In this document: in pieces, positions 11,955-39,900 of the stretch
Numbering within the stretch: position 1 is the stretch's first letter
How the letters are laid out: the number at the start of each line of letters is the position of its first letter
Source: Dendrobates tinctorius
Lineage: Eukaryota
DNA: 64,000 nucleotides
NCBI RefSeq assembly: GCF_039654945.1
Contig: NW_027361688.1
Span: 12,710,001-12,774,000, forward strand
Reading direction: 5' to 3'
The notes under the pieces: generated by a model
Seen by the model: the letters and a program-made list of their open reading frames with translations, nothing else
Told to the model about the DNA's origin: nothing
The model's database searches: none
Made by a program: the position numbers and the translations under genes

Positions 11955-14900
11955 TCATTCAATGTTCTTGTACTTTGTAAACAGGTTGTATAACACTCTC
12001 ATTGTGGACTTTAAGTCCAGATTTACGATGTCTGCAAAGAAGAAAGAAAAAGAAAAATTAGATTTTTTTTTATTATTATTTATACATTGGAGCTTAAAGG
12101 GGTTGTCTAGGACTTAAGGCATTAGTTTCTGATAGGTGTGGATCAGTCAGCCGACACCTTAATGATCAGCGTCCAGGAGCAATCTATAGTAAAAAAAAAA
12201 AAAAAAAAACGGTCAACAGATCGAGGACACAACAGCGCCGTGCACAGCGTAGTGGCCGTTCTAAGGTATCGCAACATAGATCCCATTCACTTCAATGGGA
12301 GCTGAACTGCAGTAGCTGAGAACGGCCACTACAGTGCATATGGCGCTGTGGTGCCCTCGCTCTGTACATTGTTTACTGCTGGTCCCTTGTGTACTGCAGG
12401 ACAGGGTGGGTCCTCCAGAACAGGAGACGCTCTTTGTAACCACTCTACACTCTATAAAGCATTGAATTTTCTACAGCGGACCATAAAGTGCACTTATTCT
12501 ATCAATACACTATAATTTTTTTTTATATTACTACACTAATATATATATATTTATTTATTTGTCGAGAATAGAGGGAAAATTTTTTTTATAAATANNNNNN
12601 NNNNNNNNNNNNNNNNNNNNNNNNNNNNNNNNNNNNNNNNNNNNNNNNNNNNNNNNNNNNNNNNNNNNNNNNNNNNNNNNNNNNNNNNNNNNNNNNNNNN
12701 NNNNNNNNNNNNNNNNNNNNNNNNNNNNATATATTATATATAATTTTTATTTTATTTTTTGTATATTAACGTTATATTTTTTTCATTTTATTTTTCTCCT
12801 CTATTCAAAACTATTTTTTTTTTTTTTATTAGTTAAACATTGGTACTCCTCTACAGATTTCCCCTGACCACAAGCCCTACTAGAGCAAATAGGCATATCA
12901 GAAGGACTCTCCTGCGCTATCAGAACGATTCCCGTTCGGTCATCTGAATTTTCACCATGTAATACCACAATTCGCCAGAAGTGGCCGCTGTAGCGAAAAA
13001 AGCTCAGCCACACTAGGAGTCGATCAGCTGATCGCAGATTCTTTAAGGGATTTTCTTCATTGAGAAGACAGTTCTAATAGATTTGATTTTTATTCATTGA
13101 TCCCTGTGACGGACAACTCCTGGCCCAGCGTCATCGCGACTTGGACAAGGTGAAGGTTATTCCGTTATGTAACCCTGACAACAGATTGAACCAATCGAAT
13201 TGCTGTAAATTTAGTATCTCAAGGGGAATAAAAAAAAAGGAAATGGAATTGCCAAGCTTTTGCTGTGAAGAGCGAAGTCCATTATCACATTGATTTGTAA
13301 TCCTCGCCACCTCAGGGCGACGTGCAAAAATTAGAATAATAACCCCAATTTACAGAGTCATTTTATTCCACGCCAGGAACAGAATACTGACAGATATCGA
13401 CTTGCAGGGAGATTAAGCTCTGGCCTTGCAAATGATGAGAGATCAAAAAACTAACTGTCCTTGAGATTCTTAAAGGGTACAACAAAAAATAAATAAAATT
13501 ATATATTTTTTATGAACAAAAGCGCCTCCTTTGTCAGCAGGTTGTGTCAAGTATTGCAGGTCAGCTCTTTCGATTTGAATTGAACCGAGCTGCAATACCA
13601 CTCACAACCTGTCAATAGGGGTGGCGCCGTTTTGGAAAAAATAAAAAATAAATCAGCCAAGTATCCCCTTTAAAGTCACCATTCTGCATCCAATATACTA
13701 GAATATTTGATAATCTGGCATGTATACGGTCTTATTGATATTAGCTGTAAAGAATTTTTCCGCTTGTAATAATCCATACCTTCTGGTCTTGCTTTTGGCT
13801 TCTTGAGACCTCCATCTTCCATCAATTCAAAAGCAAAGATCACATTGTGGACCTGCAACAAGAGACCCTCATTGTAAATCACAAGATAAACAAGGATACA
13901 TGTCCAATCCTGGAATCCATTTCAGAACATCTAGAGCCATAGATTGCATGCACTAACAAAGTCAGGCCTTAGAGGGGATGTCCTTTTTGCAACAATTATC
14001 ACCTGACAGATGGCAAATGTGTCACTGATGATATTACCAGTCAGGGATTCCTGCTTTCCTGTCTCTAAGCATAATATAGTGGATATTATAAAGAAGTACT
14101 GAGCAGTTGTAGCTGTGAATCCAGCTCTGGAATGAGAAACACTTACTAGAAAGAAGAAAAAAAAAAATATTTCTCTAGCCGCACTTATTTTGTCCCAATC
14201 CTGGAATACATCTCAGACATCTAGAGCCATAGATTCCTTATATTAACTAAGTCTCGCCTTAAAGGGGATGTCCCTTTAGCAACAACTGTCATCCGACAGG
14301 TGGCAAATGTATCACTGATGGTATCACCACTATCACAAGTCAGGAATTTCTACTCTCTTGTCTCTATGTAGCACATAGTGGACATTATATACAAGTACAG
14401 AGCAGTTGTAGGTGTGAATCCAGCTCTGGAATGAGAAACACTTACTAGAAGGAAGAAAAAAAAACAACTTATTTCTCTAGGTGCACTTATTTTGATCCTC
14501 CTCTCCTCTCTAAATATAGACTTCTACAGACAGCTATAATCTGATCCCTCAGTGATTTTCAAAGTGAATGATGAACTCAAAAAGGCAGGAGGGAATGTGG
14601 AATGAAGTGGCTCATAAGTGGAGAAAGCAGCACATTTCTCTGATAAGATGATATATTAAAGTTTCGTATAGCTTAGTATTGAGCTACTATGTATAATCAT
14701 CAAAAATAGAATATATATTACAAAAACAAAAAACAAACACACACTTGGAACATACTACCAAACACAACCTAGAATAAAAAGGAAACGCTAGTTTAAAAAA
14801 AAAAAAAATCAGATTAATTACAGATAAAGCTGTTATTTTCCTGCCAGCGCCGCATGGCACGAACCGTGAGGAGTCGACTAGGTGGCAAAGTCTGAATATC

Positions 14901-23200: not shown

Positions 23201-26200
23201 TACAATTAAAGGGATTCTCCATAAATAAAGTACTGATGAGCTTTCATCAGTCATCATATCAGATTTTTTGGGGTCCGACATCCCTAGTGATCTGCTGTTA
23301 GATACAGCAGCAGCCATATGTATAAAGAGTTCCATACACCATGTAGTGGCCGGCCCAGTTGCTATCAAAGGATCTGAACAGCAGTATCCAAAAATGACCA
23401 CTAGTTTACAGTACTGTGCCATTCTGGTTCTGTATCTGTGTATTTCTAATGGGCAAGTACTGGAAAATAATAATAATTAAAAAAAAAAATTAAAAAAAAT
23501 CGGTAGGTATGTTGGGTGGTACTAGGTCATGACTTCTGATGGTCTAGGAGGGGGGGTACTGTTATTCCAAAAAAGTTATGCAAATTACGGCAATTCTCCT
23601 TCAGAAGAAAGAAGGAGTTCTTTCTAGTGACGCCTACTGGAAGTAGGAACGCTATAAAAGTCAGTGTTCGACCCTTTAATGAGCCGTGCTTTCCAGAAGT
23701 GAACAGAAACCTGGCTCTATACATAAAGTAATGCAACTACAGTGTATATTGGTATTATTTGAGCCCCATATTGCGGTATTTATTTAGCCGCTGTTATACT
23801 ATACCGTATGTGCAATGTTTGATGGTGGCGGCACTGTATAGCAGTATTATTTAAGCAATTGGAACAGAAATTTGTCAAAAGGAGCAGGAGCACAAGGCTC
23901 CAATAAGGTGAAAACCCAATACTTTCTAGGGACATTTTTCTGCCCGTTACCACCCATTCTTTGCAGCAGCCATAAAGCGTACACACCCCGCTGCACACAT
24001 CCATACAGGCAGTTTATAGTTTTAGTCACCTAGGAGCTTCTGTAAGACCTGTCCGTCGTAAAAATCTTCCTCCAGGTTCTTCACTATTATCCGCTCCTCT
24101 ACAAGGACTTCATTAATCCAGTCTATTAGGACCTGCGGAGGCAGGAGGAAGTTATGGAGGGTGCATAATCATTAAACAGAAAAGAAGTCAGTCCGCCATC
24201 ACCCTTAAAGGGAAGCAAACCTGTCATTTCAGCTAACTGTTCAGCATGTACGTACATGAGGAATAACGCTGATATATGACTTGTCCCTTCCATTTTTCAG
24301 TTGTCTCTGAGCTAGTGGGTAGAGATTAACTGCTATGATGTATTGTATACACTGCACACAAAGACATGAGGGATTCCTCCTCTCCTGTCTCTATTTAGCA
24401 CATGTCCAGAAGCAGCGTGGAAGACATTATACAGTAGTACTGAGCAGTGTAGCTGCGAATCCAGTAAGTAGCATCATAAAGGACATCATACAGTACTGCT
24501 GTACTGAGTAGTGTAGCTGCAAATTTAGATAGTAGCAGCATGGAGGACATCATACAGTAGTACTAATCAGTGTAGCTGCGAATCCACGAGAACATTATAC
24601 AGCAATATTGGGCAGTGTAGCTGGGAATCCTTCTACGGAGTGAGCTAAAAAAAGAAAAATGTTACACTTGTCATTTCTGTTTTCTCTATGGATTTTAAAT
24701 CCTTGAGCTCAAATGAAAACTTTATTTAAAGGGCAACCATTCTTTTAAGTAACTTTTCAGAATAAGCTGCCCTGTGTATGTACATTAGGAATAACTATTC
24801 CTAGACATTATATGACTTCTATCCTGCATTTTCACAATTTTCATTTCCCCTTAAAAGCACTGAGCTGGTGGTGTTGGGGGACAAGCTGCTATATTATCTC
24901 CATTCAGAGATAGATTCCTTATTTTCATTTTTACTTAGCACACAAATAGACGCAGCAACATGGAGGAAACTATACAGCAGTACTGAGCGGTGTAGATGGG
25001 AAACCAGCCTGGTCGCTTTCTTCAAGTAACAGCGCCACCTTGGTACACAGGTTGCATGTGGTATTACAGTTCAACTTCAATTATGTCAATGAGGCTCAAC
25101 TACAATACCACAAACGACCTGTGAGGTGCTATAAAAAAAAAAAAAAAAACAGTATAAAAGATATATTGCTCTGACCTTTATAAGCTCCTTAAATTTTGCT
25201 TCTTCTTTGGAGTTTGGGTCGATCATGGTCCGCTCCTCATTCTCTTCTGTGCGTTCAGAAAGTGGAGAATCGGTCAGAGACATGACAGAAGCCTCAATGT
25301 TAATAATAAGATAGACGGATATAACAAGAGGAACACAAGATGCCCTTGGAAAATACTCATCAAGTGACTCTGAAGTCATTACGTTCCATCCTGGAATTTA
25401 TCAGTAATAATAATAAAAAATGATACAAAAAAGGGAAGTAAAAAAATTTAAAGGGGATAGACTTTCAATAAATCGGGGGGAGGGGTCCTGGAATTGTGCT
25501 GACTGCAATTCAGTCCCATTCAAGCGAACGGGATTGAGCTGTAGTACCAGACACAGCCACTATCGAAAGGGTGGCGCTGTGTTTAGCAAACAATGGGATG
25601 CACAGTATTGCATATTTTAAAAAAATATATCCTCTGATGAAAATGGGAATATCCCTTTAAGAAAAGTAAATAAAAGCTGCCATTATAAAATGATATTGAG
25701 GCAATACTGTACCGAGCAGGGTGTCCTCCGGGTGGATATCAATGGTGCTGGGTGACATCGGGGCGTTGATGGCGTTTCTGCCTTCATCCTGGAGATCGCT
25801 CACTAGGCAAAAAGAAAAAGTATAGACTGTGTTCAGTTTGGGTACGCGGAGGTTTATACAGATTCCTATAGGAATCCCATTTATTGCGACGACCATTAGG
25901 GCCCATACAGTATGTAATACGGAGCCCATGCCCTTGCTGTATTGCGGAGGGAAGCCTCATGATTGCACCAAAAAAAGTCCATAATCCGGATCCTATTGAT
26001 CTAGCGCCTTACTCCGGAGCGTGGCATTGGCAATAATCCATTCCCAATCATTACCCAATCCTACAAACCTGGCTTCTCCTCGGCGACCTCCTTTCTGCGT
26101 TTCCTACACAGGAGCCCGGACATGGTGCTCCCAGATTGGGGTCAGCAACGTAGAAGAAGAGGAAAGAGCAGGGGTCGCAGATTAGAGCCGGGTTATTTCT

Positions 26201-29200
26201 GACAGGGTGACGACGATGAGGTCTTGTCAGGAGCCGGGCAGATTGGAGGGGTCTGGACAGCTGGCAGGAAAAGAGGAGCCGTCTCCCGCGGTGGGTGGGG
26301 GGTGACTAATGAGCGGTACAGTATGGGAATTTAGGAGAAATAATGGTATAAAAGCTGCAGCGTCGCTGGAGGGGCGTGCTGTGCCAGGAGCGGTGCCAGC
26401 TGCTATGCAGTATAATTAGCTCACTACGGAGATGCTGCGGTCGGTCGCCCGACTGCCAACCACAAGCTCTGTCTATACAATCAGACTCATGTGTAAGCGT
26501 CTTGCAAAAATATTCAACCCCCTAAAAAGTGATTCTTCCGGCTTACAGACGTATTCTTACGCCCGTAGATTACACAAGGGCGGTACATTGTCCGTCACCG
26601 ATAATTCCAAAAATACCCGTTTAACCCCCTTAGATGCCGCAGTTCACTGCAACTAAATGATCTAAAAACGGTACAAATCTGAACTGTGAAATACAGAAGA
26701 GAGGTAGAACTTTAGGGCAGAGACAGACTGCCGAATTTCTCGGGCGAGAACTGCAGGGTAAACCTCATCCTGGCTGTCGGCTCTCCTGACCTGAGCTTGA
26801 CGGCTGCATAGTAATCCATCACGCCGTCTTTCTCAGGTCAGGAGAGGTGCCGGCCAGTCCGTGCAGTGCGATGCGATTCTCGCAGGAGTTACACGGCCGT
26901 CTGACCCTGCCCTTAGATAGAACCTTAAACTCGACCCAGTCCTTTTTGTGCGCCCGCACAGAAATAACGTCCTTTTGGAGTTCCCACACAGTAGCAAGGC
27001 TTAGAAGTCTCCTCACGTTGGCATGCCGGGCTTGACATGTCACTTTCTGCATGGCGAAAAGTTACCCCACACAGTACAATATACTTTTCATGGCCGCCGT
27101 ACAAATAATAAAATGAAAAAGTAATCCAGTTTACATAAAGAGCGGAACACAATGTAGTAACATCATCCACCAGAAGGTGCAGAGAACGGTGGAGCAGGGA
27201 GCAGATGGGACGGATGTCTCCCTGCTCCACCATTGAATCACACTGCACCCAACGCCTGAGGACACAAACAGAAGTCAGGACATGCAGTCAGCCCCCCAGG
27301 ACAGCTTCCTAAATCCGGGAGAGTTGGGAGGTATGAAGTACTTTAGCAGTCAGGGGGCAAACAATGGCCATCACCAAGATCCTATTGGCCATTTTTTGGG
27401 GAAAATTCCTAGAATGCTCAACGTCAAGATGTTTTCTGTAGAGGTGTCTGAGGAAATTACAGAACGGGGGTAAGGTGATTAGTTTGGTGTCTGGAATCAG
27501 GAGACATGTTATGGGGTGAGGTCTGCACTGACATGGGGACGGTATCATTTAAAACAATCTGCTGAGGTGGGTCACAGGACTGCTTAGCTTTAGAGGGACG
27601 GGGCGGAGAGGCTCAGATATAAAAATTGTCTAATCAACATTGTTATTTAATCCCATTTTTGGATTGTGATGTCCTGTGATAGCAGCATTAGGCCGGACAA
27701 ACTCTGTAGTAACGCCCCCTAATGGGCACAATCTAACACAAAGAGTTCCGTAAAGTTTTACAGAGAAAAGGAGATTTAAAAGAAAAAAGGGAGAAAAAAA
27801 AGGGAGAGAACAAATAAAAAGGAGAAGAAAAAAAAAGAAAAAAAAAAAAGAAAGGAAGAAGAAAAATAAGAAGAAGAAAAAAAGAAAGGGAGAAGAAAAA
27901 TAAGAAGAAAAAAAGAAATGGAGAAGAAAAAAAGAAAGGCAAAAGAAAGAAAAAGAAAGGGAGAAGAAAAAAAAGGAAGGAGAGAAAAAAGAAAGGGAGA
28001 AGAAAAAAAAAAGAAAGGGAGAAGAAAAAAAANNNNNNNNNNNNNNNNNNNNNNNNNNNNNNNNNNNNNNNNNNNNNNNNNNNNNNNNNNNNNNNNNNNN
28101 NNNNNNNNNNNNNNNNNNNNNNNNNNNNNNNNNNNNNNNNNNNNNNNNNNNNNNNNNNNNNNNNNAAAAGAAAGGGAGAAGAAAAAAAAGAAAGGAAGGA
28201 GAAAAAAAAGAAAGGAAGGAAGGAGAAAAAAAGAAGGATAAGAAAAAAAGAAAGGGAGAAGAAAAAGAAAGGGAGAAGAAAAAAAGAAAGGAAGAAAAAA
28301 AAAGAAAGAAAGGAGAAAAAAGGGAGATGAAAAAAAAGAAAGGGAGAAGAAAAAAAAGAAAGGAAGAAGAAAAAAAAAAAAGGAAGGAGAAAAAAGAAAG
28401 GGGGAAGAAAAAAAAAGAAAGGAAGAAGAAAAAAGGGAGAAGAAAAAAAAAGAAAGGAAGGGAAAAAAGGGTTCGTATTAAAAAAAAAAACTTTCTGTCC
28501 GATCTAAGACAGCAGCAGAAGAGTCGGTGGCAGTTTTGTGTTCTGGGAACGGTCACATAATAAATATCAGGGATAAAGCCTTATAGGCAGCCTAAACTGG
28601 CAGATAACAGAGAATAATAGCTTGCACTGCCGCTGAGTAATAAAGAGCGGAGAGTATTCATGCTTTTAGTGTGCCATGTCTGAGGAGAAGTAACCGACCA
28701 CAAAACTGAGCCCCGGGGTTCACGAGACACAATGTGACTGACATGTGATGCTAATATGTGACCCAACCGGGGTGACTGCTGCTACCTGTAATGCATCTGA
28801 GGAACAGCAGGGGGCACACACATTATATACACACAGTACTTCAGAAGTATTGGCTTCTCCTGACATACTCTGTGCTGCTGTAAACCTCCACATACAGCCG
28901 CCCCTCATTATATGCAGCAATGCCCCACACACACACACACTAATCTCACGTGTAAGCAGGACACGCAGCCGCCAACACACTCCCCTCCTGAAATACTCTG
29001 TGCTGCTTTTCCATTTCATCTAATGAAAGGGAAGAAAACTTTCATCTTACTTTTCTTTTTTTTTTTTAGTTTTCTGGTGACGAGTCCGCCCGATGTGACC
29101 GTACGGGAACAATCTTGACTCCTCTGGTATTTATATAGCATAACCGTGACCAAAGTGACAAAGCAAGTGACGTAGCCCTGCTGCTTCCTGCAGATAGCGG

Positions 29201-32200
29201 CATTTCACCCAGGGAGGGGATAAAGCATAAAAATGGCCATTTAATTTAAAGGGGCACTGCGCCCATAAGAGTGGGACCGATGTATAAAAGAGAAGTCTCT
29301 AATATTGGTCACACAGGTAGAGAAATATCTACGGCTCATTTTTACAGGCTCTTCCCGGACACGTGCACCCTCGGCCAGAGTGAGCGTGCATATGTTCTGG
29401 ATAGGAAAAGGGGAAGCAAAAGGATAGGTTGATGTTATTCAACTTTCCTCCCCATCCGTCAGGAAGCCCCCGGTACTCCTGCTGAAGTCAACGGGTTCGA
29501 TTGACTCTGCTATAATGTCTCCTTACTCAGTCAGCCCATTCCTGAGTAGAATGGCTGATAACAGAGAACAATAGATTGTATTCAACCCATGTAGGCGACA
29601 CGTGGCCGTATACACGGGATATCACGCTATATATTAGATAGAGCAGTGTCAGTCCTCTGGCAGGTGGGAGGTCCCTGTGGTTCTGTATGGAGCGCTCTAT
29701 ATACCGCCATATGGTGTCATTGCACTACAGGTTTGTTTGTTTTTTGTACTTGCTTTAAAGGCTTTTTTTATTAGAACAGATAAGATGTGGACATTACTTT
29801 ATGGCACCGTCTAATATACAAGTATGACAGGTTCTCCTCCTGCAATTGTTAGCGCCGCCATCCTAACAAACCACCCGGTGCACAAAATGGCTGCTTGTGG
29901 CGAAGCAAGCGACCCAATATGTCCTTCAGACTCCTCCAACGAAAAAAAAACAAAAAAACAACCCTGCTATCCCGCGTGTAGAGCTACCACAGCGGAGGAG
30001 GCCGAAGCATCTCCATCAGGCGGCCATTTTGTAGACAGTAGAGCTGGTCAGTCTGTGAGGAAGAAGGAGACCCTGTAACACTTCTACATTAGTATTTGGC
30101 ACCAAATCACGCTCGTTAAAATAAAAATGAAGTGGACACAACCCATTTTTTAAATTTGTGAGGTAAAGTGTGGCCCCCATAGCAGTCTACGGGCTCACGG
30201 TTACACAAGATGGCCGCCTACACGAGGCCTTTATGTTCAGGCCTGTGCAAATTTATAGGCTTTCTCCTCCCTGCCCTCAGGATGCACATTCCTCACACCC
30301 AAGTGTTGCCGTCCCTGTACAACTACAAACACCGAAGGTTAAAATGGCCGCCTTGTGTCACCACACAACAGGCTGTGCACACCCCATCACAGAGAGGGGC
30401 TACTAAAACCAGCCACTGGCAACCTCAGCCGATGCTACAGCGCCTCTAGAAAACACGTTAGGTCTCCTTCGTCAGCATTCAGAACCATTTTTATTTTATT
30501 TTTAATAATTATATTATTATTATTATTATATTTAACCCCTTAATGCAGATACATGGACACGTGCACCCTCGGCCAGAGGGAGCGTGCATATGTTCTGGAT
30601 AGGAAAAGGGGAAGCAAAAGGATAGGTTGATGTTATTTTTTTTTTTTATGCTTTTTTTTATGTTTTTTATGTTTTGTTTTTTTTTTTTTTTTTAACCTCC
30701 TCTTTGAGGAGTTTTTTCCATTAAGTTTTTTTTTTTATGACACCATTAATTTTAGAAAAAAAAAAAAATTCCAAATGAGGCAAAATTGTGAGGAAAAAAA
30801 AAAGTTGTCATTGTTTTTACAGCAATCATTTTCTGGTTGAAAAAAAATAAATAAAAAAAATAACAGGGCAAAAAAAACTGTAGGTCAGTACGATGACGGC
30901 GATACCAAACTCCAGGGTTGTTGTTTTTTTTTTATGCTTTAGTGGTAGAAATAAAAAAAAATAAATAAAATAAAAAAACTAAAAAAAAAAAAAAAATGTG
31001 ATCACTGTTTATTGTATTTTTTTTTTTTTTTTTTTTTGGATCTATCAAACTTTTCTGGGAAGTCAGGATGATACCAAATATGTTTATTCTTTATTTTTTA
31101 TAAGGGTTGAATTGAAGTTTTTTATTTTTTAGTATGATTTTTATATTTATTTATTTATTTTTTTTTTTTTAACTCTGTTTATGTTTATTTTTTTTTAGTC
31201 CTTTTATGACTTGAACGTGTGATCGCTTATACTTTGTACGGCTATACCATTGCATTGCGGTATGTAGAGAAATCACGGTTCTCTTATGGTGAGGCGGATC
31301 AAGAAGCCAAATTGTAGGGGTTACAAGGCGAATAGTCACTCTGTGGTGGGAGCGGGTGATGAAAAACAATAAAAAAATAATAATAATGAGCCTGTAAAAG
31401 CCAAATGGTGCAAAATATTTATAAGAGACCCCCGTTTTTGTTTTTTGGGGTGGGTGTTACACGCTTTTTAGAAAGAAAAAACATAAAAGTCCCCAGAAAT
31501 GGACAATCCCTTTAAATGACCCTATATTACTAACTGTATGCAGGGAGCGCCCTCTAGTGGTGGCTGCAGGTAGCCAGAATTGTGTAGATTTTTCCTATGG
31601 TTGTGTAAAGCAGGGCAGGGGATTTGAAGGCTCAGTGTCATGAAAGCTGAAGCTCAGATCCGTGAGGACCATAGGGGGACGGATTCCCCTTGGACACGGC
31701 ACGGAGAGGCTGTGCTTCCCTTGCTCAGCAATATCATTAGGAGAGGTGGCGCAGGGTATATGAAGCTAATAAGACCACCGGTATGAGGCATCACAGTAAG
31801 AAAGTTGGGTCCCCCATAGTTGGCACCTTCAGTGCTGGGAGGACCAGGAGGATAAAGAACTTTCCGCCCCTTAATCCGCTGTCAGATCAGATCAGCCACG
31901 ATCACCGGTCACCGAATTCAGCGATAAGCCGCGGCGCAGTTAACTCTATCCTGACTGCCTAAAATGGGTGACAGCACAGCGGACGCCTGAAACTTGACAC
32001 TTTTCTCAATAACCCTGTGCTGGTCAGTCCCTTTAATTTAGGACCAGACAGGAATGAGTGCAAAGGGACTGATGAGTGTGGGACAGGAATGGGTTAAAGG
32101 GAATGATCAGTGCGGAACTGGATGGGATTAGCTGGTTTATTTAGAGTATGGCAAGACAGGAATGGGTTAAAGGGACTGACTATCCTGGGACCAGACATGA

Positions 32201-32649
32201 AGGAGTTACTCAGGCCCATTGACTCATTCATTGCTCACCTTACACTGATCAGTCCCTTTAACCCATTCCTCTCCAGTCCCCACACCCCTCCATCCCTTTA
32301 ACCCATTCCTCTCCAAACCCCCCCCCCCTTTTCCTGGTACCTGGTCACAAGCCAGTCCCCTTTAACCCATTCCTGCCCTCTCCCACAACAATCATTCACC
32401 TTATCCTGTCCCACACTAGTCATTCTTTTTAACCCATTCCTGCACTAGTTGCCATTCCTGTAGCCCCCTCTATAAAACTCCCCAGACCAGACACAGCTGC
32501 CCCCTTTGGCTCTTCGCTGCCCTTCTCTCCCTCTCACCTTCTCTGGCTTTCTTCTTCCTGGCCAGTGTGCCCCCCAGTTTGCCCAGGAAGGACTCATCCT
32601 TCTTCATCCTTTGGCTCTGCAGGGTGGGAGACCTGGGGGTGGCTGACAT
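11955..32649 (-). CDS. PARVB: Beta-parvin, 13 coding exons, 364 aa
   Basis: Exons in transcript order: 32538-32649, 25713-25802, 25176-25246, 24030-24132, 20789-20929, 19994-20109, 19368-19426, 18279-18298, 17510-17571, 17364-17432, 15657-15758, 13780-13852, 11955-12031. All introns GT-AG, phases consistent, total 1095 nt. Translation MSATPRSP...[36 protein letters not shown], two CH domains, ...[34 protein letters not shown]. Confidence 0.97.
12595..12728. other. Assembly gap (N run) in PARVB intron 12
   Basis: Run of N. Confidence 1.
13901..14493. repeat. ~290-bp diverged tandem duplication in PARVB intron 11
   Basis: TGTCC(C)AATCCTGGAAT...GCACTTATTT repeated at 13901 and 14191. Confidence 0.85.
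15881..16491. mobile_element. T2/Kolobok-type MITE, almost entirely palindromic
   Basis: TTAA|AGGGAATCTGTCACC...GGTGACAGATTCCCT|TTAA. The two arms are reverse complements over about 300 bp. Confidence 0.9.
16530..16946 (+). mobile_element. Degraded Tc1 5' fragment
   Basis: Encodes the HTH-like [27 protein letters not shown]. Shares upstream sequence with 57586-57850. Confidence 0.7.
19092..19210. repeat. Short palindromic MITE-like repeat (~115 bp), representative copy
   Basis: AAACAGCGCCA...CAGGTTG...GGTATTGC...GCAATACC...CAACCTG...TGGCGCTGTTT. Other copies near 13517, 17638, 19518, 25029, 25500 and 59229. Confidence 0.75.
21359..22765. mobile_element. hAT-like non-autonomous element, right end truncated
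   Basis: Starts TAGAGATGGGCGAACC. Internal inverted repeat ~21560-21710 vs ~22575-22720. Confidence 0.6.
26069..26123 (-). CDS. PARVB: Candidate alternative first coding exon of PARVB ([18 protein letters not shown])
   Basis: Kozak CACCATG, 18 codons + 1 nt, donor CAG|GTTTGT. Phase 1 matches exon 2 (G+TG = Val). Confidence 0.65.
27765..28470. repeat. GA-rich low-complexity tract containing an assembly gap (N 28033-28165)
   Basis: Almost pure purine (AAAGAAAGGGAGAAG-like units). Confidence 0.95.
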
Positions 32650-32739
32650 GTTCCCCCTGGATGAGAGTGAGGAGGAGGGAGGATTGTCCTCATGTGATAA
32701 GAGGAGACAGGAAGAGGATGTGTCGGTGGCCGCACTTAT

Positions 32740-32850
32740 CAGCCTCCAATGGCGGAGTGTGGAGGGCTGGGCAGGGAGGGTCCGCAGCCACCCACCAGGG
32801 CAACAATGGAACCAGAAGGATCCAACCTGGAAACTCCGAGCCAATCACAA
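32740..32850 (-). promoter_or_regulatory. Putative PARVB proximal promoter
   Basis: CCAAT motifs (~32746 and ~32841) and GC-rich boxes 100-200 bp upstream of the ATG. Confidence 0.4.
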
Positions 32851-33084
32851 CCAGAGGGGACCCCCAGCCTTGTACACTGTGGGGTCCCTCACTTATCACC
32901 TCCTGTGCATCTCAGTGCACCTATCTGGCACAGCTCCTTAGGCTGCGTTCACACGTGACAGATTTCTGTTTTTCCATTCCATTGTACAAGGACATGACAG
33001 AAAGCTTTATTCTGGGGGGGGAAGAAGAGCGCTGGAGTCATAGTGGCACCGGCCCAGGGATATAATCGTGCACGGAGCAATGTA

Positions 33085-35636
33085 TACTGTACATAGAGGG
33101 GTTATCATTGTACAGGAGGGGGAGGAGGGGAGCTGTGATATCACCTATTGTGAATGGTGGATTCTGTGTTATCTACTGTATATAGAGGTGTTATCAGTCA
33201 TTATACAGGAGGAGGAGGTGAGCTGTGATATCACCTATTGTGAATGGTGGATCCTGTGTTATCTACTGTATATAGAGGTGTTATCAGTCATTGTACAGGA
33301 GGAGGAGGTGAGCTGTGATATCACCTATTGTGAATGGTGGGTCCTGTGATATCTACTGTATAGAGAGGCGTTATCAGTCATTGTACAGGAGGAGGAGGTG
33401 AGCTGTGATATCATCTATTGTGACTGGTGGGTCCTGTGTTATCTACTGTATATAGAGGTGCTGTCAGTCATTGTACAGGAGGAGGAGGTGAGCTGTGACA
33501 TCACCTATTGTGAATGGTGGATCCTTTGCTATCTACTGTATATAGAGGTGGTATCAGTCATTGTACAGGAGGAGGTGAGCTGTGATATCACCTATTGTGA
33601 ATGGTGGATCCTGTGCTATCTACAGTATATAGAGGTGTTATCAGTCATTGTACAGGAGGAGGTGAGCTGTGATATCACCTATTGTGAATGGTGGATTCTG
33701 TGTTATCTACTGTATATAGAGGTGTTATCAGTCATTATACAGGAGGAGGAGGTGACCTGTGATATCACCTATTGTGAATGGTGGATCCTGTGTTATCTAC
33801 TGTATATAGAGGTGTTATCAGTCATTGTACAGGAGGAGGAGGTGAGCTGTGATATCACCTATTGTGAATGGTGGGTCCTGTGATATCTACTGTATAGAAA
33901 GGCGTTATCAGTCATTGTACAGGAGGAGGAGGTGAGCTGTGATATCATCTATTGTGACTGGTGGGTCCTGTGTTATCTACTGTATATAGAGGTGCTGTCA
34001 GTCATTGTACAGGAGGAGGAGGTGAGCTGTGACATCACCTATTGTGAATGGTGGATCCTTTGCTATCTACTGTATATAGAGGTGGTATCAGTCATTGTAC
34101 AGGAGGAGGTGAGCTGTGACATCACCTATTGTGAATGGTGGATCCTGTGTTATCTATTGTATATAGAGGTGTTATCAGTCATTGTACAGGAGGAGCAGGA
34201 TGTGAGCTGTGACATCACCTATTGTGAATGGTGGGTCCTGTGTTATCTACTGTATATAGAGGTGTTATCAGTCATTGTACAGGAGGAGGAGGTGAGCTGT
34301 GACATCACCTATTGTGAATGGTGGATCCTGTATTATCTACTGTATATAGAAGTGTTATCAGTCATTGTACAGGAGGAGGTGAGCTGTGACATCACCTATA
34401 GTGAATGGTGGATCCTGTGTTATCTACTGTATATAGAGGTGTTATCAGTCATTGTACAGGAGGAGCAGGATGTGAGCTGTGACATCACCTATTGTGAATG
34501 GTGGGTCCTGTGTTATCTACTGTATATAGAGGTGTTATCCGTCATTGTACAGGAGGAGGAGGAGGTGAGCTGTGACATCACCTATTGTGAATGGTGAATC
34601 CTGTCTTATCTACTGTATATAGAGGTGTTATCAGTCATTGTACAGGAGGAGGAGGAGGTGAGCTGTGACATCACCTATTGTGAATGGTGGATCCTGTGTT
34701 ATCTACTGTATATAGAGGTGTTATCAGTCATTGTACAGGAGGAGCAGGATGTGAGCTGTGACATCACCTATTGTGAATGGTGGATCCTGTGTTTTCTACT
34801 GTATATAGAGGTGTTATCAGTCATTGTACAGGAGGAGCAGGATGTGAGCTGTGACATCACCTATTGTGAATGGTGGGTCCTGTGTTATCTACTGTATATA
34901 GAGGTGTTATCAGTCATTGTACAGGAGGAGGAGGTGAGCTGTGACATCACCTATTGTGAATGGTGGATCCTGTATTATCTACTGTATATAGAAGTGTTAT
35001 CAGTCATTGTACAGGAGGAGGTGAGCTGTGACATCACCTATTGTGAATGGTGGATCCTGTGTTATCTACTGTATATAGAGGTGTTATCAGTCATTGTACA
35101 GGAGGAGGAGGAGGTGAGCTGTGACATCACCTATTGTGAATGGTGAATCCTGTCTTATCTACTGTATATAGAGGTGTTATCAGTCATTGTACAGGAGGAG
35201 GAGGAGGTGAGCTGTGACATCACCTATTGTGAATGGTGGATCCTGTGTTATCTACTGTATATAGAGGTGTTATCAGTCATTGTACAGGAGGAGGAGGAGG
35301 TGAGCTGTGACATCACCTATTGTGAATGGTGGATCCTGTGTCATCAGCTGTATATAGAGGTGTTATCAGTCATTGTACAGGAGGAGGAGGTGAGCTGTGA
35401 CATCACCTATTGTGAATGGTGGATCCTGTGTCATCAGCTGTATATAGAGGTGTTATCAGTCATTGTACAGGAGGAGGAGGTGAGCTGTGACATCACCTAT
35501 TGTGAATGGTGGATCCTGTGTTATCAGCTGTATATAGAGGTGATATCAGTCATTGTACAGGAGGAGGAGGTGAGCTGTGACATCACCTATTGTGAATGGT
35601 GGATCCTGTGTTATCAGCTGTATATCAGTCATTGTA
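33085..35636. repeat. ~87-93-bp tandem satellite (~28 units) between divergent PARVB and YARS2
   Basis: Unit GTGAGCTGTGA(C/T)ATCACCTATTGTGAATGGTGGATCCTGTGTTATCTACTGTATATAGAGGTGTTATCAGTCATTGTACAG(GAG)n. Confidence 0.98.
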
Positions 35637-36931: not shown

Positions 36932-39900
36932 ATGGCGGCGTCCATGAGACACGCTCTCCGGTCCCTCTCTCGCCTTTCCCGGCCCCGTGTGCGCTGTCTA
37001 TCCAGTCTCTCTGACCCTTTAGTGTCCGGGACACGCCGGGGTCTTTTTAAGGATGTGTTCCCGGCTGAGACCGCCAGGCTGCATCTCCAGGAGCTCCTGT
37101 CCTCCGGCCCTCAGACCGTATACTGCGGCTTTGACCCCACGGCAGACTCGCTACACGTGGGGAATCTGCTGGCCGTGCTGGGTCTCCTCCACTTTCACCG
37201 GGCCGGGCACCATGTCATCGCTGTAGTCGGCGGGGCCACTGCTCAGATCGGGGACCCCAGCGGCCGTCACCGGGAGAGGGCGCCCCTGAGCCCGGAGCAG
37301 CTGGCGGAGAACGTGCGGGGGATCCGGGACTCGCTGCACCGCATCTTCTCCAACTACGAGGGGCCGGTGCGGGCCGGCGGGCGGGTGACGGTGCTGGATA
37401 ACGCCGCCTGGTACCGGCAGCGCTCGGCCGTGGACTTCCTGGCCTCGGTGGGCAGACACTTCCGCATGGGCACCCTGCTGAGCAGACACAGTGTGCAGAG
37501 CCGCCTCAGCTCCGCGGAGGGCATGAGCCTGGCAGAGTTCACCTACCAGGTGTTCCAGGCCTATGACTTCTACTACCTGCACCAGAAGCATGACTGCAAG
37601 ATCCAGCTGGGCGGCACCGACCAACTGGGCAACCTCATGTCCGGGCACGACTTCATACAGAGGTGCGGGCCCCCGAAAGGGCCATCTGATCCCTACCCCC
37701 CGCTGTAGGACTGGGGCATCTGAAAGGGGCTAATCTGATCTCCACCCCCTTCTACAGGAACGGGGCAGCCGAAAGGGGCATCTGGTCTCTACCCATATAG
37801 GAATGGAGAACAGAAAGGGGCATCTAGTCTTTACCCCCTGCTGCAGGAATGGGGCACCTGTAAGAGGCTCATCTGATCTCTACCCCCTTCTACAGGAACG
37901 GGGCACCTGATCTCTACCCCTATAGGAATGGGGCACCTGAAAGGGGCTCATCTGATTCCTACTCCCCTTACAGGAATGAGGCACCCGAAAGGGGCATCTG
38001 ATCCCTACCCCCGCTGTAGGATCGGGGCACCTGAAAGGGGCTCATCTGATCTCTACCCCCCTCTACAGGAACAGGTCATCTGATCTCTACCCCCCTCTAC
38101 AGCAACGGGGCATCTGATCTCTACCCCTATAGGAATGGGGCCCCTGAAAGGGGCTCATCTGACCCCTAAACACCCTCCTCCTTCCTCCCCCGCCCCGCTG
38201 CAGGAATGGGCCACATGCAAGGGGCTCATCTGACCCCTACCTCCCGCTGCAGGAATGGGCCACCAGAAAGGGGCTCATCTGATTTCTAGTCCACCCCGTC
38301 TACAGGAAAGGGGCATCTGAATGGGGCTAATTTTCTCTACGTCCCCCACAACCACCCTTTTAAATTCCCCTACAAATCTTGACAGCAGCATTTAGAGTGT
38401 GAGATTTGAGCATTGCACTGTTCATCATCCATTGACCCATCAACATGATCACTGGGTGCCGATGGATTCACGTGTCCTCTGGTAGTTTACTAATAGGTCT
38501 CCATGGATATCATGTAACAAGCGAGCCAACGATTAAGGGACTTAAGATTTAAAGTTTGGGGGAAAAAAAATCTGCCTTTCAATATATATAGGAATAGGTT
38601 TAGCGTGCACTCGGTCTTATTATGAATGAGGTGCTGGTGTAACGGACCTGGTGGTCCCAATATAGAGTAATTATATAATTCACCGCACACTCTTGTGGAT
38701 TATCATGCCAAATAGTTTAAATTTTATTAACACACAATCTGGGAGCGTAACAGAATAATGCAATGGAAGCGATATATAGAACGTTTCGGCTCCACCGGAG
38801 CCTTTATCACACAATCGCTTAATCCAGTGCCATACAAGAGAAGGGTATAGAGAAGAGGGATGAAAATCCCTGTGGTGTCACAGAGACTAGTCATATGCTA
38901 AAATCCTTATAAAGGTGCCGGGTCACCATCAATGGCTAGTGGGGACCTGCAGGGGTTGCTGTCTAAAGCGGCGCTCCCGCACCTGGCTGAGTCATTCTAT
39001 ATATCACTTCCATTGCATTATTCTGTTACGCTCCCAGATTGTGTGTTAATAAAATTTAAACTATTTGGCATGATAATCCACAAGAGTGTGCGGTGAATTA
39101 TATAATTACTCTTTCAATATATATACACTTTTTCAAACAGATTTTGTTTGCCCTGTTTTAAGCATTTGATCTGTCAAAATCAAATATTTAACCTATACTG
39201 TAAAGCAAATGCTACAACGCAATCAAGACTTCATACGTGTACCCTAAAATGGTGTATAAAAACTACAGCTCCACACACTAAAACCAAAACCTCACACAGC
39301 TCCATCCATGGAAAAATAAATTCTTGGGTCTCAGAAAATAACGATACATCCTGTATATTCACTATTTACTAAGCACAGGAAACGCATCCCTCATAAATGT
39401 AGTTATGTTTGTTCTCCTGCAGGAAATCCACCATATGAACATACCCATAAGGGCTGCGATAGTCTCCGTACTCATGCAGGAATTAGAAACCCCCTCCTAC
39501 AGATATATAGATATGGGTCATTCTCAGGGGGGTGCGATCTATGTGGTCAGGATTTTATATTGACCCTCAGTCTTTACACAGGACCACAGGAGAAGACGTG
39601 TTCGGGATCCTGTTGCCGCTTATCACAAGCACCACCGGAGATAAGCTGGGCAAGTCTGCCGGAAACGCCGTATGGCTGAACAGAGAGCGGACGTCACCGT
39701 TTGAGTTTTACCAGTTCTTTGTACGGCAGCAAGATGGCAACGTGGAGAGGTGATGTGTGCAAGATTAGGATAGGGGGGCTGGAATATGCTTTATAATTAG
39801 CTGTCTTAAATGCGAACACAGAGGGAACGTTGCTCACTTCAGAAGGTGAGAGGCGCTAATGACACGTCTGCACATCCCTCCATGATACCTGCCGCTCGAT

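What the first reader, a model, noticed from the sequence alone, without database searches (positions are those of the whole stretch)
26069..26450. In-phase alternative first coding exon of PARVB encoding a Cys plus polybasic N-terminus, with its own promoter-like region
Seen: on the - strand, 266 nt upstream of exon 2, CACC-ATG opens [18 protein letters not shown]. It ends at CAG|GTTTGT in phase 1, the phase exon 2 needs, giving ...[11 protein letters not shown]. Flanking it are CCAAT boxes (GATTGG on + near 26134 and 26241), CAGCTG E-boxes (~26259, ~26397) and a GGGTGGGGG box. The ORF is too short to appear in the supplied track. Inference: an internal promoter produces a shorter parvin isoform that replaces the 37-aa N-terminus with an LLC-RKRRK segment resembling palmitoylation/membrane-targeting motifs, possibly in muscle.
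Basis: partly seen in the sequence, partly recalled or inferred. Interest (0 to 1): 0.7.

Follow-up and report, generated by a model that had tools for sequence, protein, structure and literature searches.

The report
Conserved alternative first exon of beta-parvin
The short open reading frame is a real alternative first exon of the frog beta-parvin gene, conserved from coelacanth to birds and already listed in public annotation as "isoform X2"; nobody appears to have studied what its cysteine-plus-basic start does.

Summary
On the minus strand, ATG 26123 opens [22 protein letters not shown]|GTTTGT donor follows base 26069 in phase 1. A 266-nt intron leads to exon 2 (25802..25713), giving ...[11 protein letters not shown].

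The ORF alone is not beyond chance: intron 1 holds ten ATG-to-phase-1-donor configurations. Conservation is what makes it real.
- The same exon, M-[S/A]-G-L-L-C-basic run ending in phase 1, starts annotated "beta-parvin isoform X2" proteins in all main frog lineages, lizards, turtles, birds and coelacanth. That is 75 proteins with 29 distinct N-termini, and Met1, Leu5 and Cys6 are invariant.
- I found it in intron 1 of five fetched loci.
- Among five frogs, 8 of 9 variable sites in codons 2-11 are third positions.
- About 340 nt upstream is conserved among hyloid frogs, including both CAGCTG boxes. A 24-nt element there is identical in Discoglossus.

No mammalian counterpart was seen.

So the exon is real and the isoform is already in annotation. 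The promoter is inferred, not shown. Palmitoylation and muscle expression are untested.

The parts
26069..26123 (-). Coding part of alternative first exon 1b: ATG 26123, [18 protein letters not shown] plus the first base of a Val codon (phase 1).
   Evidence: tblastn to Ranitomeya imitator isoform X2 gives 16/17 identical residues. Orthologous exons were found in L001-L005.
26063..26071 (-). Splice donor CAG|GTTTGT of exon 1b; the exon's last base is 26069.
   Evidence: 5.2 bits on a simple matrix. CAGGTTTG(T/G)AGGATT is conserved in Hyla sarda and E. coqui. Phase-1 donors are also present in X. laevis, Discoglossus and Corvus.
25803..26068 (-). The 266-nt intron between exon 1b and exon 2.
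   Evidence: In other species the equivalent intron is about 1.4-6 kb.
25713..25802 (-). Exon 2, shared by both isoforms: (V)[29 protein letters not shown].
   Evidence: 100% identical to Ranitomeya and Hyla proteins over 30 residues.
26124..26462 (-). Conserved block upstream of the exon 1b ATG: 5' UTR plus candidate core promoter. The transcription start was not determined.
   Evidence: blastn: window 26462..26057 matches Hyla at E 1.6e-34 and E. coqui at E 1.6e-53. Alignment A1.
26190..26213 (-). The most deeply conserved non-coding element, containing GTCACCCTGTCAGAAATA, 67-90 nt upstream of the ATG.
   Evidence: The 24 nt are 100% identical in Discoglossus. The 18-nt core is exact in E. 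coqui and Discoglossus, with 3 mismatches in Hyla and X. laevis. Partly alignable in Corvus.
26258..26263 (.). CAGCTG E-box, proximal.
   Evidence: Conserved in Hyla and E. coqui; X. laevis has CAAATG at the aligned place.
26397..26402 (.). CAGCTG E-box, distal.
   Evidence: Conserved in Hyla and E. coqui.
32538..32649 (-). Coding part of canonical exon 1a: [37 protein letters not shown] plus 1 nt. Exon 1b replaces this exon.

Best explanation
Window 26123..26069 (minus strand) is exon 1b of the beta-parvin gene (PARVB). It is an ancient alternative 5'-terminal coding exon lying in intron 1, about 6.4 kb downstream of canonical exon 1a.

Transcripts that begin just upstream of it splice from the phase-1 donor at 26069 to exon 2. 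They would encode a protein about 19 residues shorter. The exon 1a segment carries the Ser/Thr-Pro sites, the amphipathic [10 protein letters not shown] helix and LARKKKA. It is replaced by [11 protein letters not shown]plus a short variable acidic tail.

Shown: the exon, its reading frame, its phase-1 donor and its position are conserved across frogs, and it is annotated as an isoform start across sarcopterygians. The protein sequence is under purifying selection.

Inferred: the conserved block of about 340 nt upstream is its own non-CpG-island promoter plus 5' UTR.

Inferred more weakly: the new N-terminus keeps the Leu-x-basic half of the parvin WH2-like actin-binding motif. L5, R7, K8, R9, R10 match alpha-parvin L37, R39, R40, K41, K42. 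It adds an invariant Cys next to hydrophobic and basic residues, a layout typical of N-terminal S-palmitoylation and membrane-binding signals. This isoform of the ILK-PINCH-parvin complex may therefore be held at membranes and lack the phospho-regulated part of exon 1a.
For: Sequence: searches give the ATG with A at -3, the in-frame upstream stop, the phase-1 GT donor and a good exon 2 acceptor.

Orthologous proteins: about 45 bird clusters of 339 residues start MAGLLC[KR]RRKKG-V-SDLQEEG. Frog isoform X2 proteins include Ranitomeya [18 protein letters not shown], Anomaloglossus, Engystomops, E. coqui and Bufo. Further examples:
- Discoglossus and Pogona
- Lerista, Lacerta, turtles, Latimeria and Lithobates
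- Ascaphus, Bombina, Spea, Xenopus laevis, Hymenochirus, Rana, Pyxicephalus, Anolis, Rhineura, Chelydra and Gallus
The tally is 75 proteins and 29 distinct N-termini. M1, L5 and C6 are invariant, and positions 8-11 are almost always K or R.

Genomic orthologues: the ORF lies in intron 1, upstream of exon 2, in Hyla sarda, E. coqui, X. laevis S, Discoglossus and Corvus. Each has a phase-1 GT donor and a purine at -3.

Selection: among five frogs, pairwise pS is 0.26-0.77 against pN 0-0.04 over codons 2-11. Eight of nine variable sites are third positions; the binomial P is about 0.001, my arithmetic.

Upstream conservation.

Not a cassette exon: the only AG near the ATG (GGGAGCACC) reads GGGACCACC in Hyla and E. 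coqui. Splicing exon 1a into it would also shift the frame (my reading).

WH2 residues: Vaynberg et al. 2018, PMC6203859.
Against: The 'isoform X2' records are computational gene models, and I could not inspect their transcript support. The X2 products are not on record in the contig index.

The donor is only moderate (5.2 bits, T at +3 and +4). The transcription start is unknown, so a further upstream non-coding exon feeding into the 5' UTR cannot be excluded.

The mild CpG enrichment in the window (o/e 0.7-0.9 against a background of 0.53) is not seen at the orthologous exon in other species. It is therefore not promoter evidence.

CCAAT 26246 is not conserved, and no TATA box is conserved.

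No test of acylation, localisation or tissue was possible. The conserved basic run may simply be the retained actin-binding or NLS-like motif, with no membrane role.
Confidence: 0.88

Rival explanations
1. The ORF is a chance open frame sitting inside a conserved non-coding regulatory element, such as an intronic enhancer of PARVB or YARS2, and it is not translated. The 'isoform X2' records would then be gene-model artefacts propagated between species by protein homology.
For: Intron 1 offers ten comparable ATG-to-phase-1-donor configurations by chance. The donor is moderate. The surrounding DNA is conserved as non-coding sequence too. No transcript was seen here.
Against: Variation among frogs falls on third codon positions (8 of 9 sites) and the amino acids are unchanged. 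The ATG, the purine at -3 and a phase-1 donor are kept in all six genomes, even though the donor position and the tail length differ. The peptide is kept from coelacanth to birds, where the flanking DNA no longer aligns. An enhancer would not preserve a reading frame.
Confidence: 0.04
2. The exon is real and coding, but it has no promoter of its own. It is reached by splicing from a non-coding exon further upstream, for example one sharing the exon 1a promoter. The isoform choice would then be made by splicing and not by promoter use.
For: The transcription start was not observed. A pyrimidine-rich stretch lies 20-45 nt upstream of the ATG. There is no conserved TATA box, and no CpG island in other species.
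Against: The AG that could serve as acceptor in the window is not conserved in Hyla or E. coqui. The 340 nt upstream are conserved as strongly as the exon 1a promoter region. That is more than a 5' UTR acceptor would need.
Confidence: 0.08
3. The exon is real, but the conserved Leu-Cys-basic run serves only as the retained half of the WH2-like actin-binding motif, or as an NLS-like motif. The Cys is not lipidated and there is no membrane targeting.
For: Exon 1a ends with the matching G-T-L-A-R-K-K-K motif. The five alpha-parvin residues needed for actin binding (L37, R39, R40, K41, K42) all have counterparts in exon 1b. No paper linking parvin to palmitoylation was found.
Against: Cys6 is invariant in 29 of 29 distinct N-termini over more than 400 million years, while the matching position in exon 1a is Ala, Val or Gly. 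The upstream helix of the WH2 motif is missing, so actin binding by this half alone is doubtful.
Confidence: 0.5

Closest known systems
RefSeq/UniProt 'beta-parvin isoform X2' models of frogs, lizards, turtles, birds and coelacanth (e.g. Ranitomeya imitator XP_069619452.1, Bufo bufo XP_040295096.1, Xenopus laevis XP_041441771.1, Gallus gallus A0A3Q2TSL7, Latimeria isoform X2)
   Same: Same gene, same place in intron 1, same M-[S/A]-G-L-L-C-polybasic start, same phase-1 junction giving Val before SDLQ[D/E]EG. The window's peptide differs from the Ranitomeya one at 2 of 18 residues.
   Different: None in kind. The acidic tail (VAEEKP) is a lineage-specific variant shared with dendrobatids. The intron to exon 2 is unusually short here, 266 nt against about 1.4-6 kb elsewhere.
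Human PARVB 'CLINT' isoform (397 aa) from an alternative 5' exon (review PMC2792345)
   Same: Alternative first exon of PARVB that replaces the exon 1a-encoded N-terminus and joins exon 2.
   Different: CLINT's exon lies upstream of exon 1a and encodes about 70 residues. Exon 1b lies downstream in intron 1 and encodes 12-24 residues. No sequence relation was shown.
PARVB-s / PARVB-ss (350 and 313 aa), and the 327-aa 'M-SDLQ' models
   Same: N-terminally shortened beta-parvins that lack part or all of exon 1a's product.
   Different: The review describes PARVB-s and PARVB-ss as products of downstream initiation codons. The 327-aa models start with a Met in place of the junction Val. None carries the Leu-Leu-Cys-basic segment.
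N-terminal S-palmitoylation / polybasic membrane signals of the GAP-43 type (from my own knowledge)
   Same: A Cys within the first 10 residues, flanked by hydrophobic residues and followed by a run of Lys/Arg.
   Different: One Cys, not two. No experimental acylation data. Resemblance only.
WH2-like actin-binding motif in the parvin N-terminus (Vaynberg et al. 2018, PMC6203859)
   Same: Exon 1b keeps Leu-x-[R/K]4, matching alpha-parvin L37, R39, R40, K41, K42.
   Different: It lacks the preceding amphipathic helix (D[D/E]SFLGKLGG), so it is at most half a motif.

Membership tests
PARVB exon 1b ('isoform X2'-type alternative first exon) | Lies in intron 1, between exon 1a and exon 2, on the gene's strand | tested here: met
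   Window 26123..26069 lies between 32538 and 25802. The order is the same in L001-L005.
PARVB exon 1b ('isoform X2'-type alternative first exon) | ATG-initiated M-[S/A]-G-[L/F]-L-C followed by a run of 4-5 mostly basic residues | tested here: met
   [11 protein letters not shown], against 29 distinct orthologous N-termini.
PARVB exon 1b ('isoform X2'-type alternative first exon) | GT donor in phase 1, so that G|TG makes the Val before SDLQ | tested here: met
   CAG|GTTTGT after 55 nt of CDS. Phase-1 donors in all five other genomes.
PARVB exon 1b ('isoform X2'-type alternative first exon) | Spliced transcript joining exon 1b to exon 2 in this species | not testable with these tools
X2 products are not indexed.
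Autonomous alternative promoter | Transcription start immediately upstream of the exon | not testable with these tools
   Indirect evidence only: a conserved 340-nt block and a non-conserved candidate acceptor AG.
CpG-island promoter | CpG observed/expected of at least 0.6 and raised GC at the orthologous site across species | tested here: not met
   The window has o/e 0.7-0.9. Hyla has 0.43, X. laevis 0.24 and Corvus 0.20, each at or below its own background.
N-terminal S-palmitoylation signal (GAP-43 type) | Cys near the N-terminus, flanked by hydrophobic and basic residues | tested here: met
   L4-L5-C6-R7-K8-R9-R10-K11. Cys6 is invariant in 29 of 29 N-termini.
N-terminal S-palmitoylation signal (GAP-43 type) | Thioester-linked acyl group on the Cys, and membrane association that depends on it | not testable with these tools
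   Needs a wet-lab assay. No literature was found.
N-myristoylation signal | Gly at position 2 (M-G-x-x-x-S/T) | tested here: not met
   Position 2 is Ser, Ala or Thr; Gly is at position 3.
WH2-like actin-binding motif of parvins | Amphipathic helix followed by a Leu-basic (LKKV-like) segment | tested here: not met
   The Leu-x-basic segment is present. The helix D[D/E]SFLGKLGG is encoded only by exon 1a.
Human CLINT alternative exon | Located upstream of exon 1a and encodes about 70 residues | tested here: not met
   Exon 1b is downstream of exon 1a and encodes 18 residues.

The most novel reading that the evidence does not exclude
Exon 1b would encode an ancient lipid-anchored form of beta-parvin, at least as old as the coelacanth-tetrapod split. 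Cys6 would be palmitoylated and, together with the basic run, would tether an ILK-PINCH-parvin complex directly to the plasma membrane or sarcolemma, free of the phospho-regulated WH2 helix of exon 1a. Mammals would have lost the coding version, leaving only non-coding alternative first exons that yield the 327- and 312-residue forms. Exon 1b may itself be an old partial copy of the 3' end of exon 1a, since both end in G-x-L-x-[R/K]4.
Probability: 0.2. Interest if true: 0.5.

Novelty: already known. Interest (0 to 1): 0.25.

Why it matters
For the scan, this is a true positive of an ordinary kind. A reader with no tools found a real 55-nt coding first exon, but the isoform is already in public gene models of dozens of vertebrates.

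The biological residue is modest but real. The N-terminus M-x-G-L-L-C-basic has an invariant Cys. It has been kept from coelacanth to birds and frogs. It was not seen in the roughly 80 mammalian PARVB proteins I looked at, nor as a significant match in the one mammalian locus I looked at. My literature searches found no description or functional study of it.

Beta-parvin links integrins to actin and recruits partners to the sarcolemma. A membrane-tethered isoform missing from mammalian models would therefore interest adhesion biologists who work in chick, Xenopus or zebrafish-like systems.

Tried and rejected

2. Joined spliced model. Under the operators' rule I did not build or search an exon 1b + exon 2 + ... 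protein. I searched exon 4 alone by reference and then used stored database proteins.

3. Region-limited word search with the frog X2 protein. It gave only 9 candidates, because hyloid X2 proteins sit inside a cluster whose representative is the X1 form. The Pogona query and the cluster listings were more useful.

4. Exact look-ups of X2 proteins. They are not on record, since only the longest product per gene is indexed. Alligator, Latimeria and Microcaecilia loci could not be fetched.

5. CpG-island argument. I first thought the CpG-richer patch in the window marked a promoter. I dropped this after the orthologous sites in five species showed none.

6. Mammalian orthologue. The marmot intron 1 has '...QLLCRRRS...' without an ATG at L006:24928. 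blastn gives only a 13-nt match with E 0.18, among many equally good chance hits, so it is not evidence.

7. Cassette-exon reading. Rejected on frame and on the non-conserved AG.

8. Literature. Searches for PARVB plus alternative first exon, alternative promoter, palmitoylation or isoforms found only the CLINT and s/ss isoforms and the WH2 work. Nothing on this exon turned up.

No human contigs were fetched or compared.


Full report
**What is in the sequence**

On the minus strand the window reads caccATG at 26123. The frame is [18 protein letters not shown], followed by CAG|GTTTGT with the last exon base at 26069. That is 55 nt of coding sequence, so the exon ends in phase 1. After a 266-nt intron, exon 2 begins at 25802 behind a good pyrimidine tract and ttgcctag. 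The split codon G|TG gives Val, and the frame continues [29 protein letters not shown] to a donor at 25713. An in-frame TGA lies seven codons upstream of the ATG.

The canonical first coding exon, called exon 1a here, runs from ATG 32649 to 32538. It encodes [37 protein letters not shown] and ends in the same phase with a strong AAG|GTGAGA donor. tblastn with frog beta-parvin proteins places the whole gene in the window, from 32649 down to about 11958 on the minus strand. The best matches are poison-frog (dendrobatid) proteins, close but not identical.

**Is it more than chance?**

On its own, no. A simple scan of intron 1 finds ten ATG-to-phase-1-donor configurations of at least ten codons, using six distinct donor sites. 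Most of those sites score as well as or better than the candidate's 5.2 bits. CCAAT, CAGCTG and G-rich boxes are too short to count as evidence. The case therefore rests on comparison with other species.

**Comparative evidence from proteins**

I searched exon 4 alone by reference, took a full-length bird PARVB from the hits, and ran the word search with it.

About 45 bird clusters named 'beta-parvin isoform X2' (339 residues) begin MAGLLC[K/R]RRKKG-V-SDLQEEG in place of the canonical 38 residues. Cluster listings and two region-limited searches then showed the same start in many other groups:
- **Frogs:** Ranitomeya ([18 protein letters not shown]), Anomaloglossus, Engystomops, Eleutherodactylus, Bufo, Rana, Lithobates, Pyxicephalus, Spea, Xenopus laevis, Hymenochirus, Bombina, Discoglossus and Ascaphus.
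- **Lizards:** Pogona, Lerista, Lacerta/Podarcis, Anolis and Rhineura.
- **Turtles:** Trachemys, Chrysemys, Terrapene and Chelydra.
- **Birds:** chicken, in addition to the bird clusters above.
- **Coelacanth:** Latimeria (MAALLCGTKQKKG).

Altogether I hold 75 such proteins with 29 distinct N-termini. Met1, Leu5 and Cys6 never vary, and positions 8-11 are almost always Lys or Arg. Roughly 80 mammalian PARVB proteins passed through the same listings. None has this start; they show the canonical form, a 327-residue 'M-SDLQ' form or a 312-residue form.

**Comparative evidence from genomes**

I fetched the PARVB loci of Hyla sarda, Eleutherodactylus coqui, Xenopus laevis (S), Discoglossus pictus and Corvus cornix. 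In every one the MSGLLC/MAGLLC frame lies in intron 1, upstream of exon 2. Each has a purine at -3 and a GT donor in phase 1, although the donor position and the length of the acidic tail differ.

Over codons 2-11 the five frogs differ at nine sites. Eight of these are third codon positions, and the ninth is a conservative Arg/Lys change. Pairwise pS is 0.26-0.77 against pN 0-0.04. If variable sites fell evenly over the three codon positions, eight or more of nine at position 3 would have a probability of about 0.001 (my arithmetic). This is the signature of a translated sequence and not of a conserved enhancer.

**The upstream region**

blastn of window 25000-34000 against the loci shows that 26462..26057 is one of only a few conserved blocks in intron 1. 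It matches Hyla at E 1.6e-34 and E. coqui at E 1.6e-53, comparable to the block containing exon 1a and its upstream flank. In the alignment:
- Both CAGCTG boxes are conserved among the three hyloid frogs.
- The proximal box reads CAAATG in Xenopus.
- A 24-nt element (26213..26190, containing GTCACCCTGTCAGAAATA) is identical in Discoglossus and nearly so in Xenopus.
- The CCAAT at 26246 is not conserved (CCACT in Hyla, CCACA in E. coqui).
- No TATA box is conserved.
- The only AG that could serve as an acceptor near the ATG is absent in Hyla and E. coqui. Together with the frame shift it would cause, this argues against a cassette-exon reading.

I first took the mildly raised CpG content of the window's patch as a promoter sign. 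The orthologous sites in five other species show no such enrichment, so I dropped the argument. If this is a promoter, it is not a CpG island.

**What it most likely does**

Shown: there is an alternative coding first exon under protein-level selection, widely annotated as the start of an isoform.

Inferred: transcription starts within the conserved block upstream. This is plausible because the exon is 5'-terminal in all models and the block is conserved like a promoter. No start site was observed.

Functional reading, which is inference only:
- Exon 1a encodes the Ser/Thr-Pro-rich start.
- Exon 1a also encodes the WH2-like actin-binding motif. In alpha-parvin its residues L37, R39, R40, K41 and K42 are required for actin binding (PMC6203859).
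- Exon 1b drops the Ser/Thr-Pro part and the amphipathic helix of that motif.
- Exon 1b keeps a matching Leu-x-basic run (L5, R7, K8, R9, R10), with an invariant Cys where exon 1a has Ala, Val or Gly.

A Cys beside hydrophobic residues and a basic run at the extreme N-terminus is the layout of GAP-43-type palmitoylation and membrane signals (my own knowledge). Gly is at position 3, so myristoylation is not expected. The muscle idea rests only on two conserved CAGCTG boxes and on the known muscle enrichment of PARVB.

**Known or new**

The exon is already in RefSeq and UniProt gene models of many species, so as a feature it is known. The literature I could search describes the human upstream-exon isoform CLINT and the downstream-initiation forms PARVB-s and PARVB-ss (PMC2792345). 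It holds nothing on this exon or on parvin palmitoylation. The apparent absence from mammals rests on a sample of proteins and one marmot locus. An LLCRRR-like stretch without an ATG in that locus is not significant.

**Limits**

The X2 records are computational models whose support I could not inspect. No human contigs were fetched.

**Verdict**

The feature is already known from annotation, and interest is low to moderate.

Noticed in passing
window ~37000-38000 (+ strand); L001:1-117: A tyrosyl-tRNA-synthetase-like (YARS2-type) ORF lies divergent from PARVB exon 1a, in a patch with GC 0.63. The same neighbour (PF00579) sits upstream of PARVB in Hyla sarda, so the gene order is conserved.
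   Followed up: partly
window 27800-28500: A long purine-rich (GA) low-complexity tract in intron 1 surrounds the N gap at 28033-28165. A second N run lies at 12595-12728.
   Followed up: no
window 30250-30300 and 29062-29201: Two further conserved non-coding blocks in PARVB intron 1. The first is 92% identical to both Hyla sarda and E. coqui. The second is 74% identical to Hyla over 154 nt.
   Followed up: no
window 32000-33500; L001-L006 exon 1a regions: The exon 1a regions of frogs are strongly CpG-depleted (o/e 0.04-0.3), while exon 1a of crow and marmot sits in a clear CpG island (o/e 0.8-0.9).
   Followed up: partly
proteins P0276, P0399, P0404, P0383, P0392, P0305 and others: A 327-residue 'M-SDLQ...' beta-parvin model recurs in frogs, turtles, lizards, mammals and coelacanth. 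A Met stands where the junction Val is, which suggests a further first exon ending in A (A|TG). I did not locate that exon in the window.
   Followed up: no
L006:24900-24945 (Marmota monax PARVB intron 1): A stretch reading ...QLLCRRRS... with a following GT but no ATG loosely resembles exon 1b. blastn support is at chance level (13 nt, E 0.18).
   Followed up: yes
L003:11335-11440 (X. laevis S); protein P0403: The X. laevis S homeolog has an in-frame upstream ATG that adds 20 residues (MLLGVTCPQSEAAERESHRI) before MSGLLC in one annotated model.
   Followed up: no
window 25713 (exon 2 donor): The exon 2 donor TCG|GTACAG scores very low on a simple matrix (0.6 bits), yet it is the conserved constitutive junction. 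My simple donor scores should therefore be read with caution.
   Followed up: no
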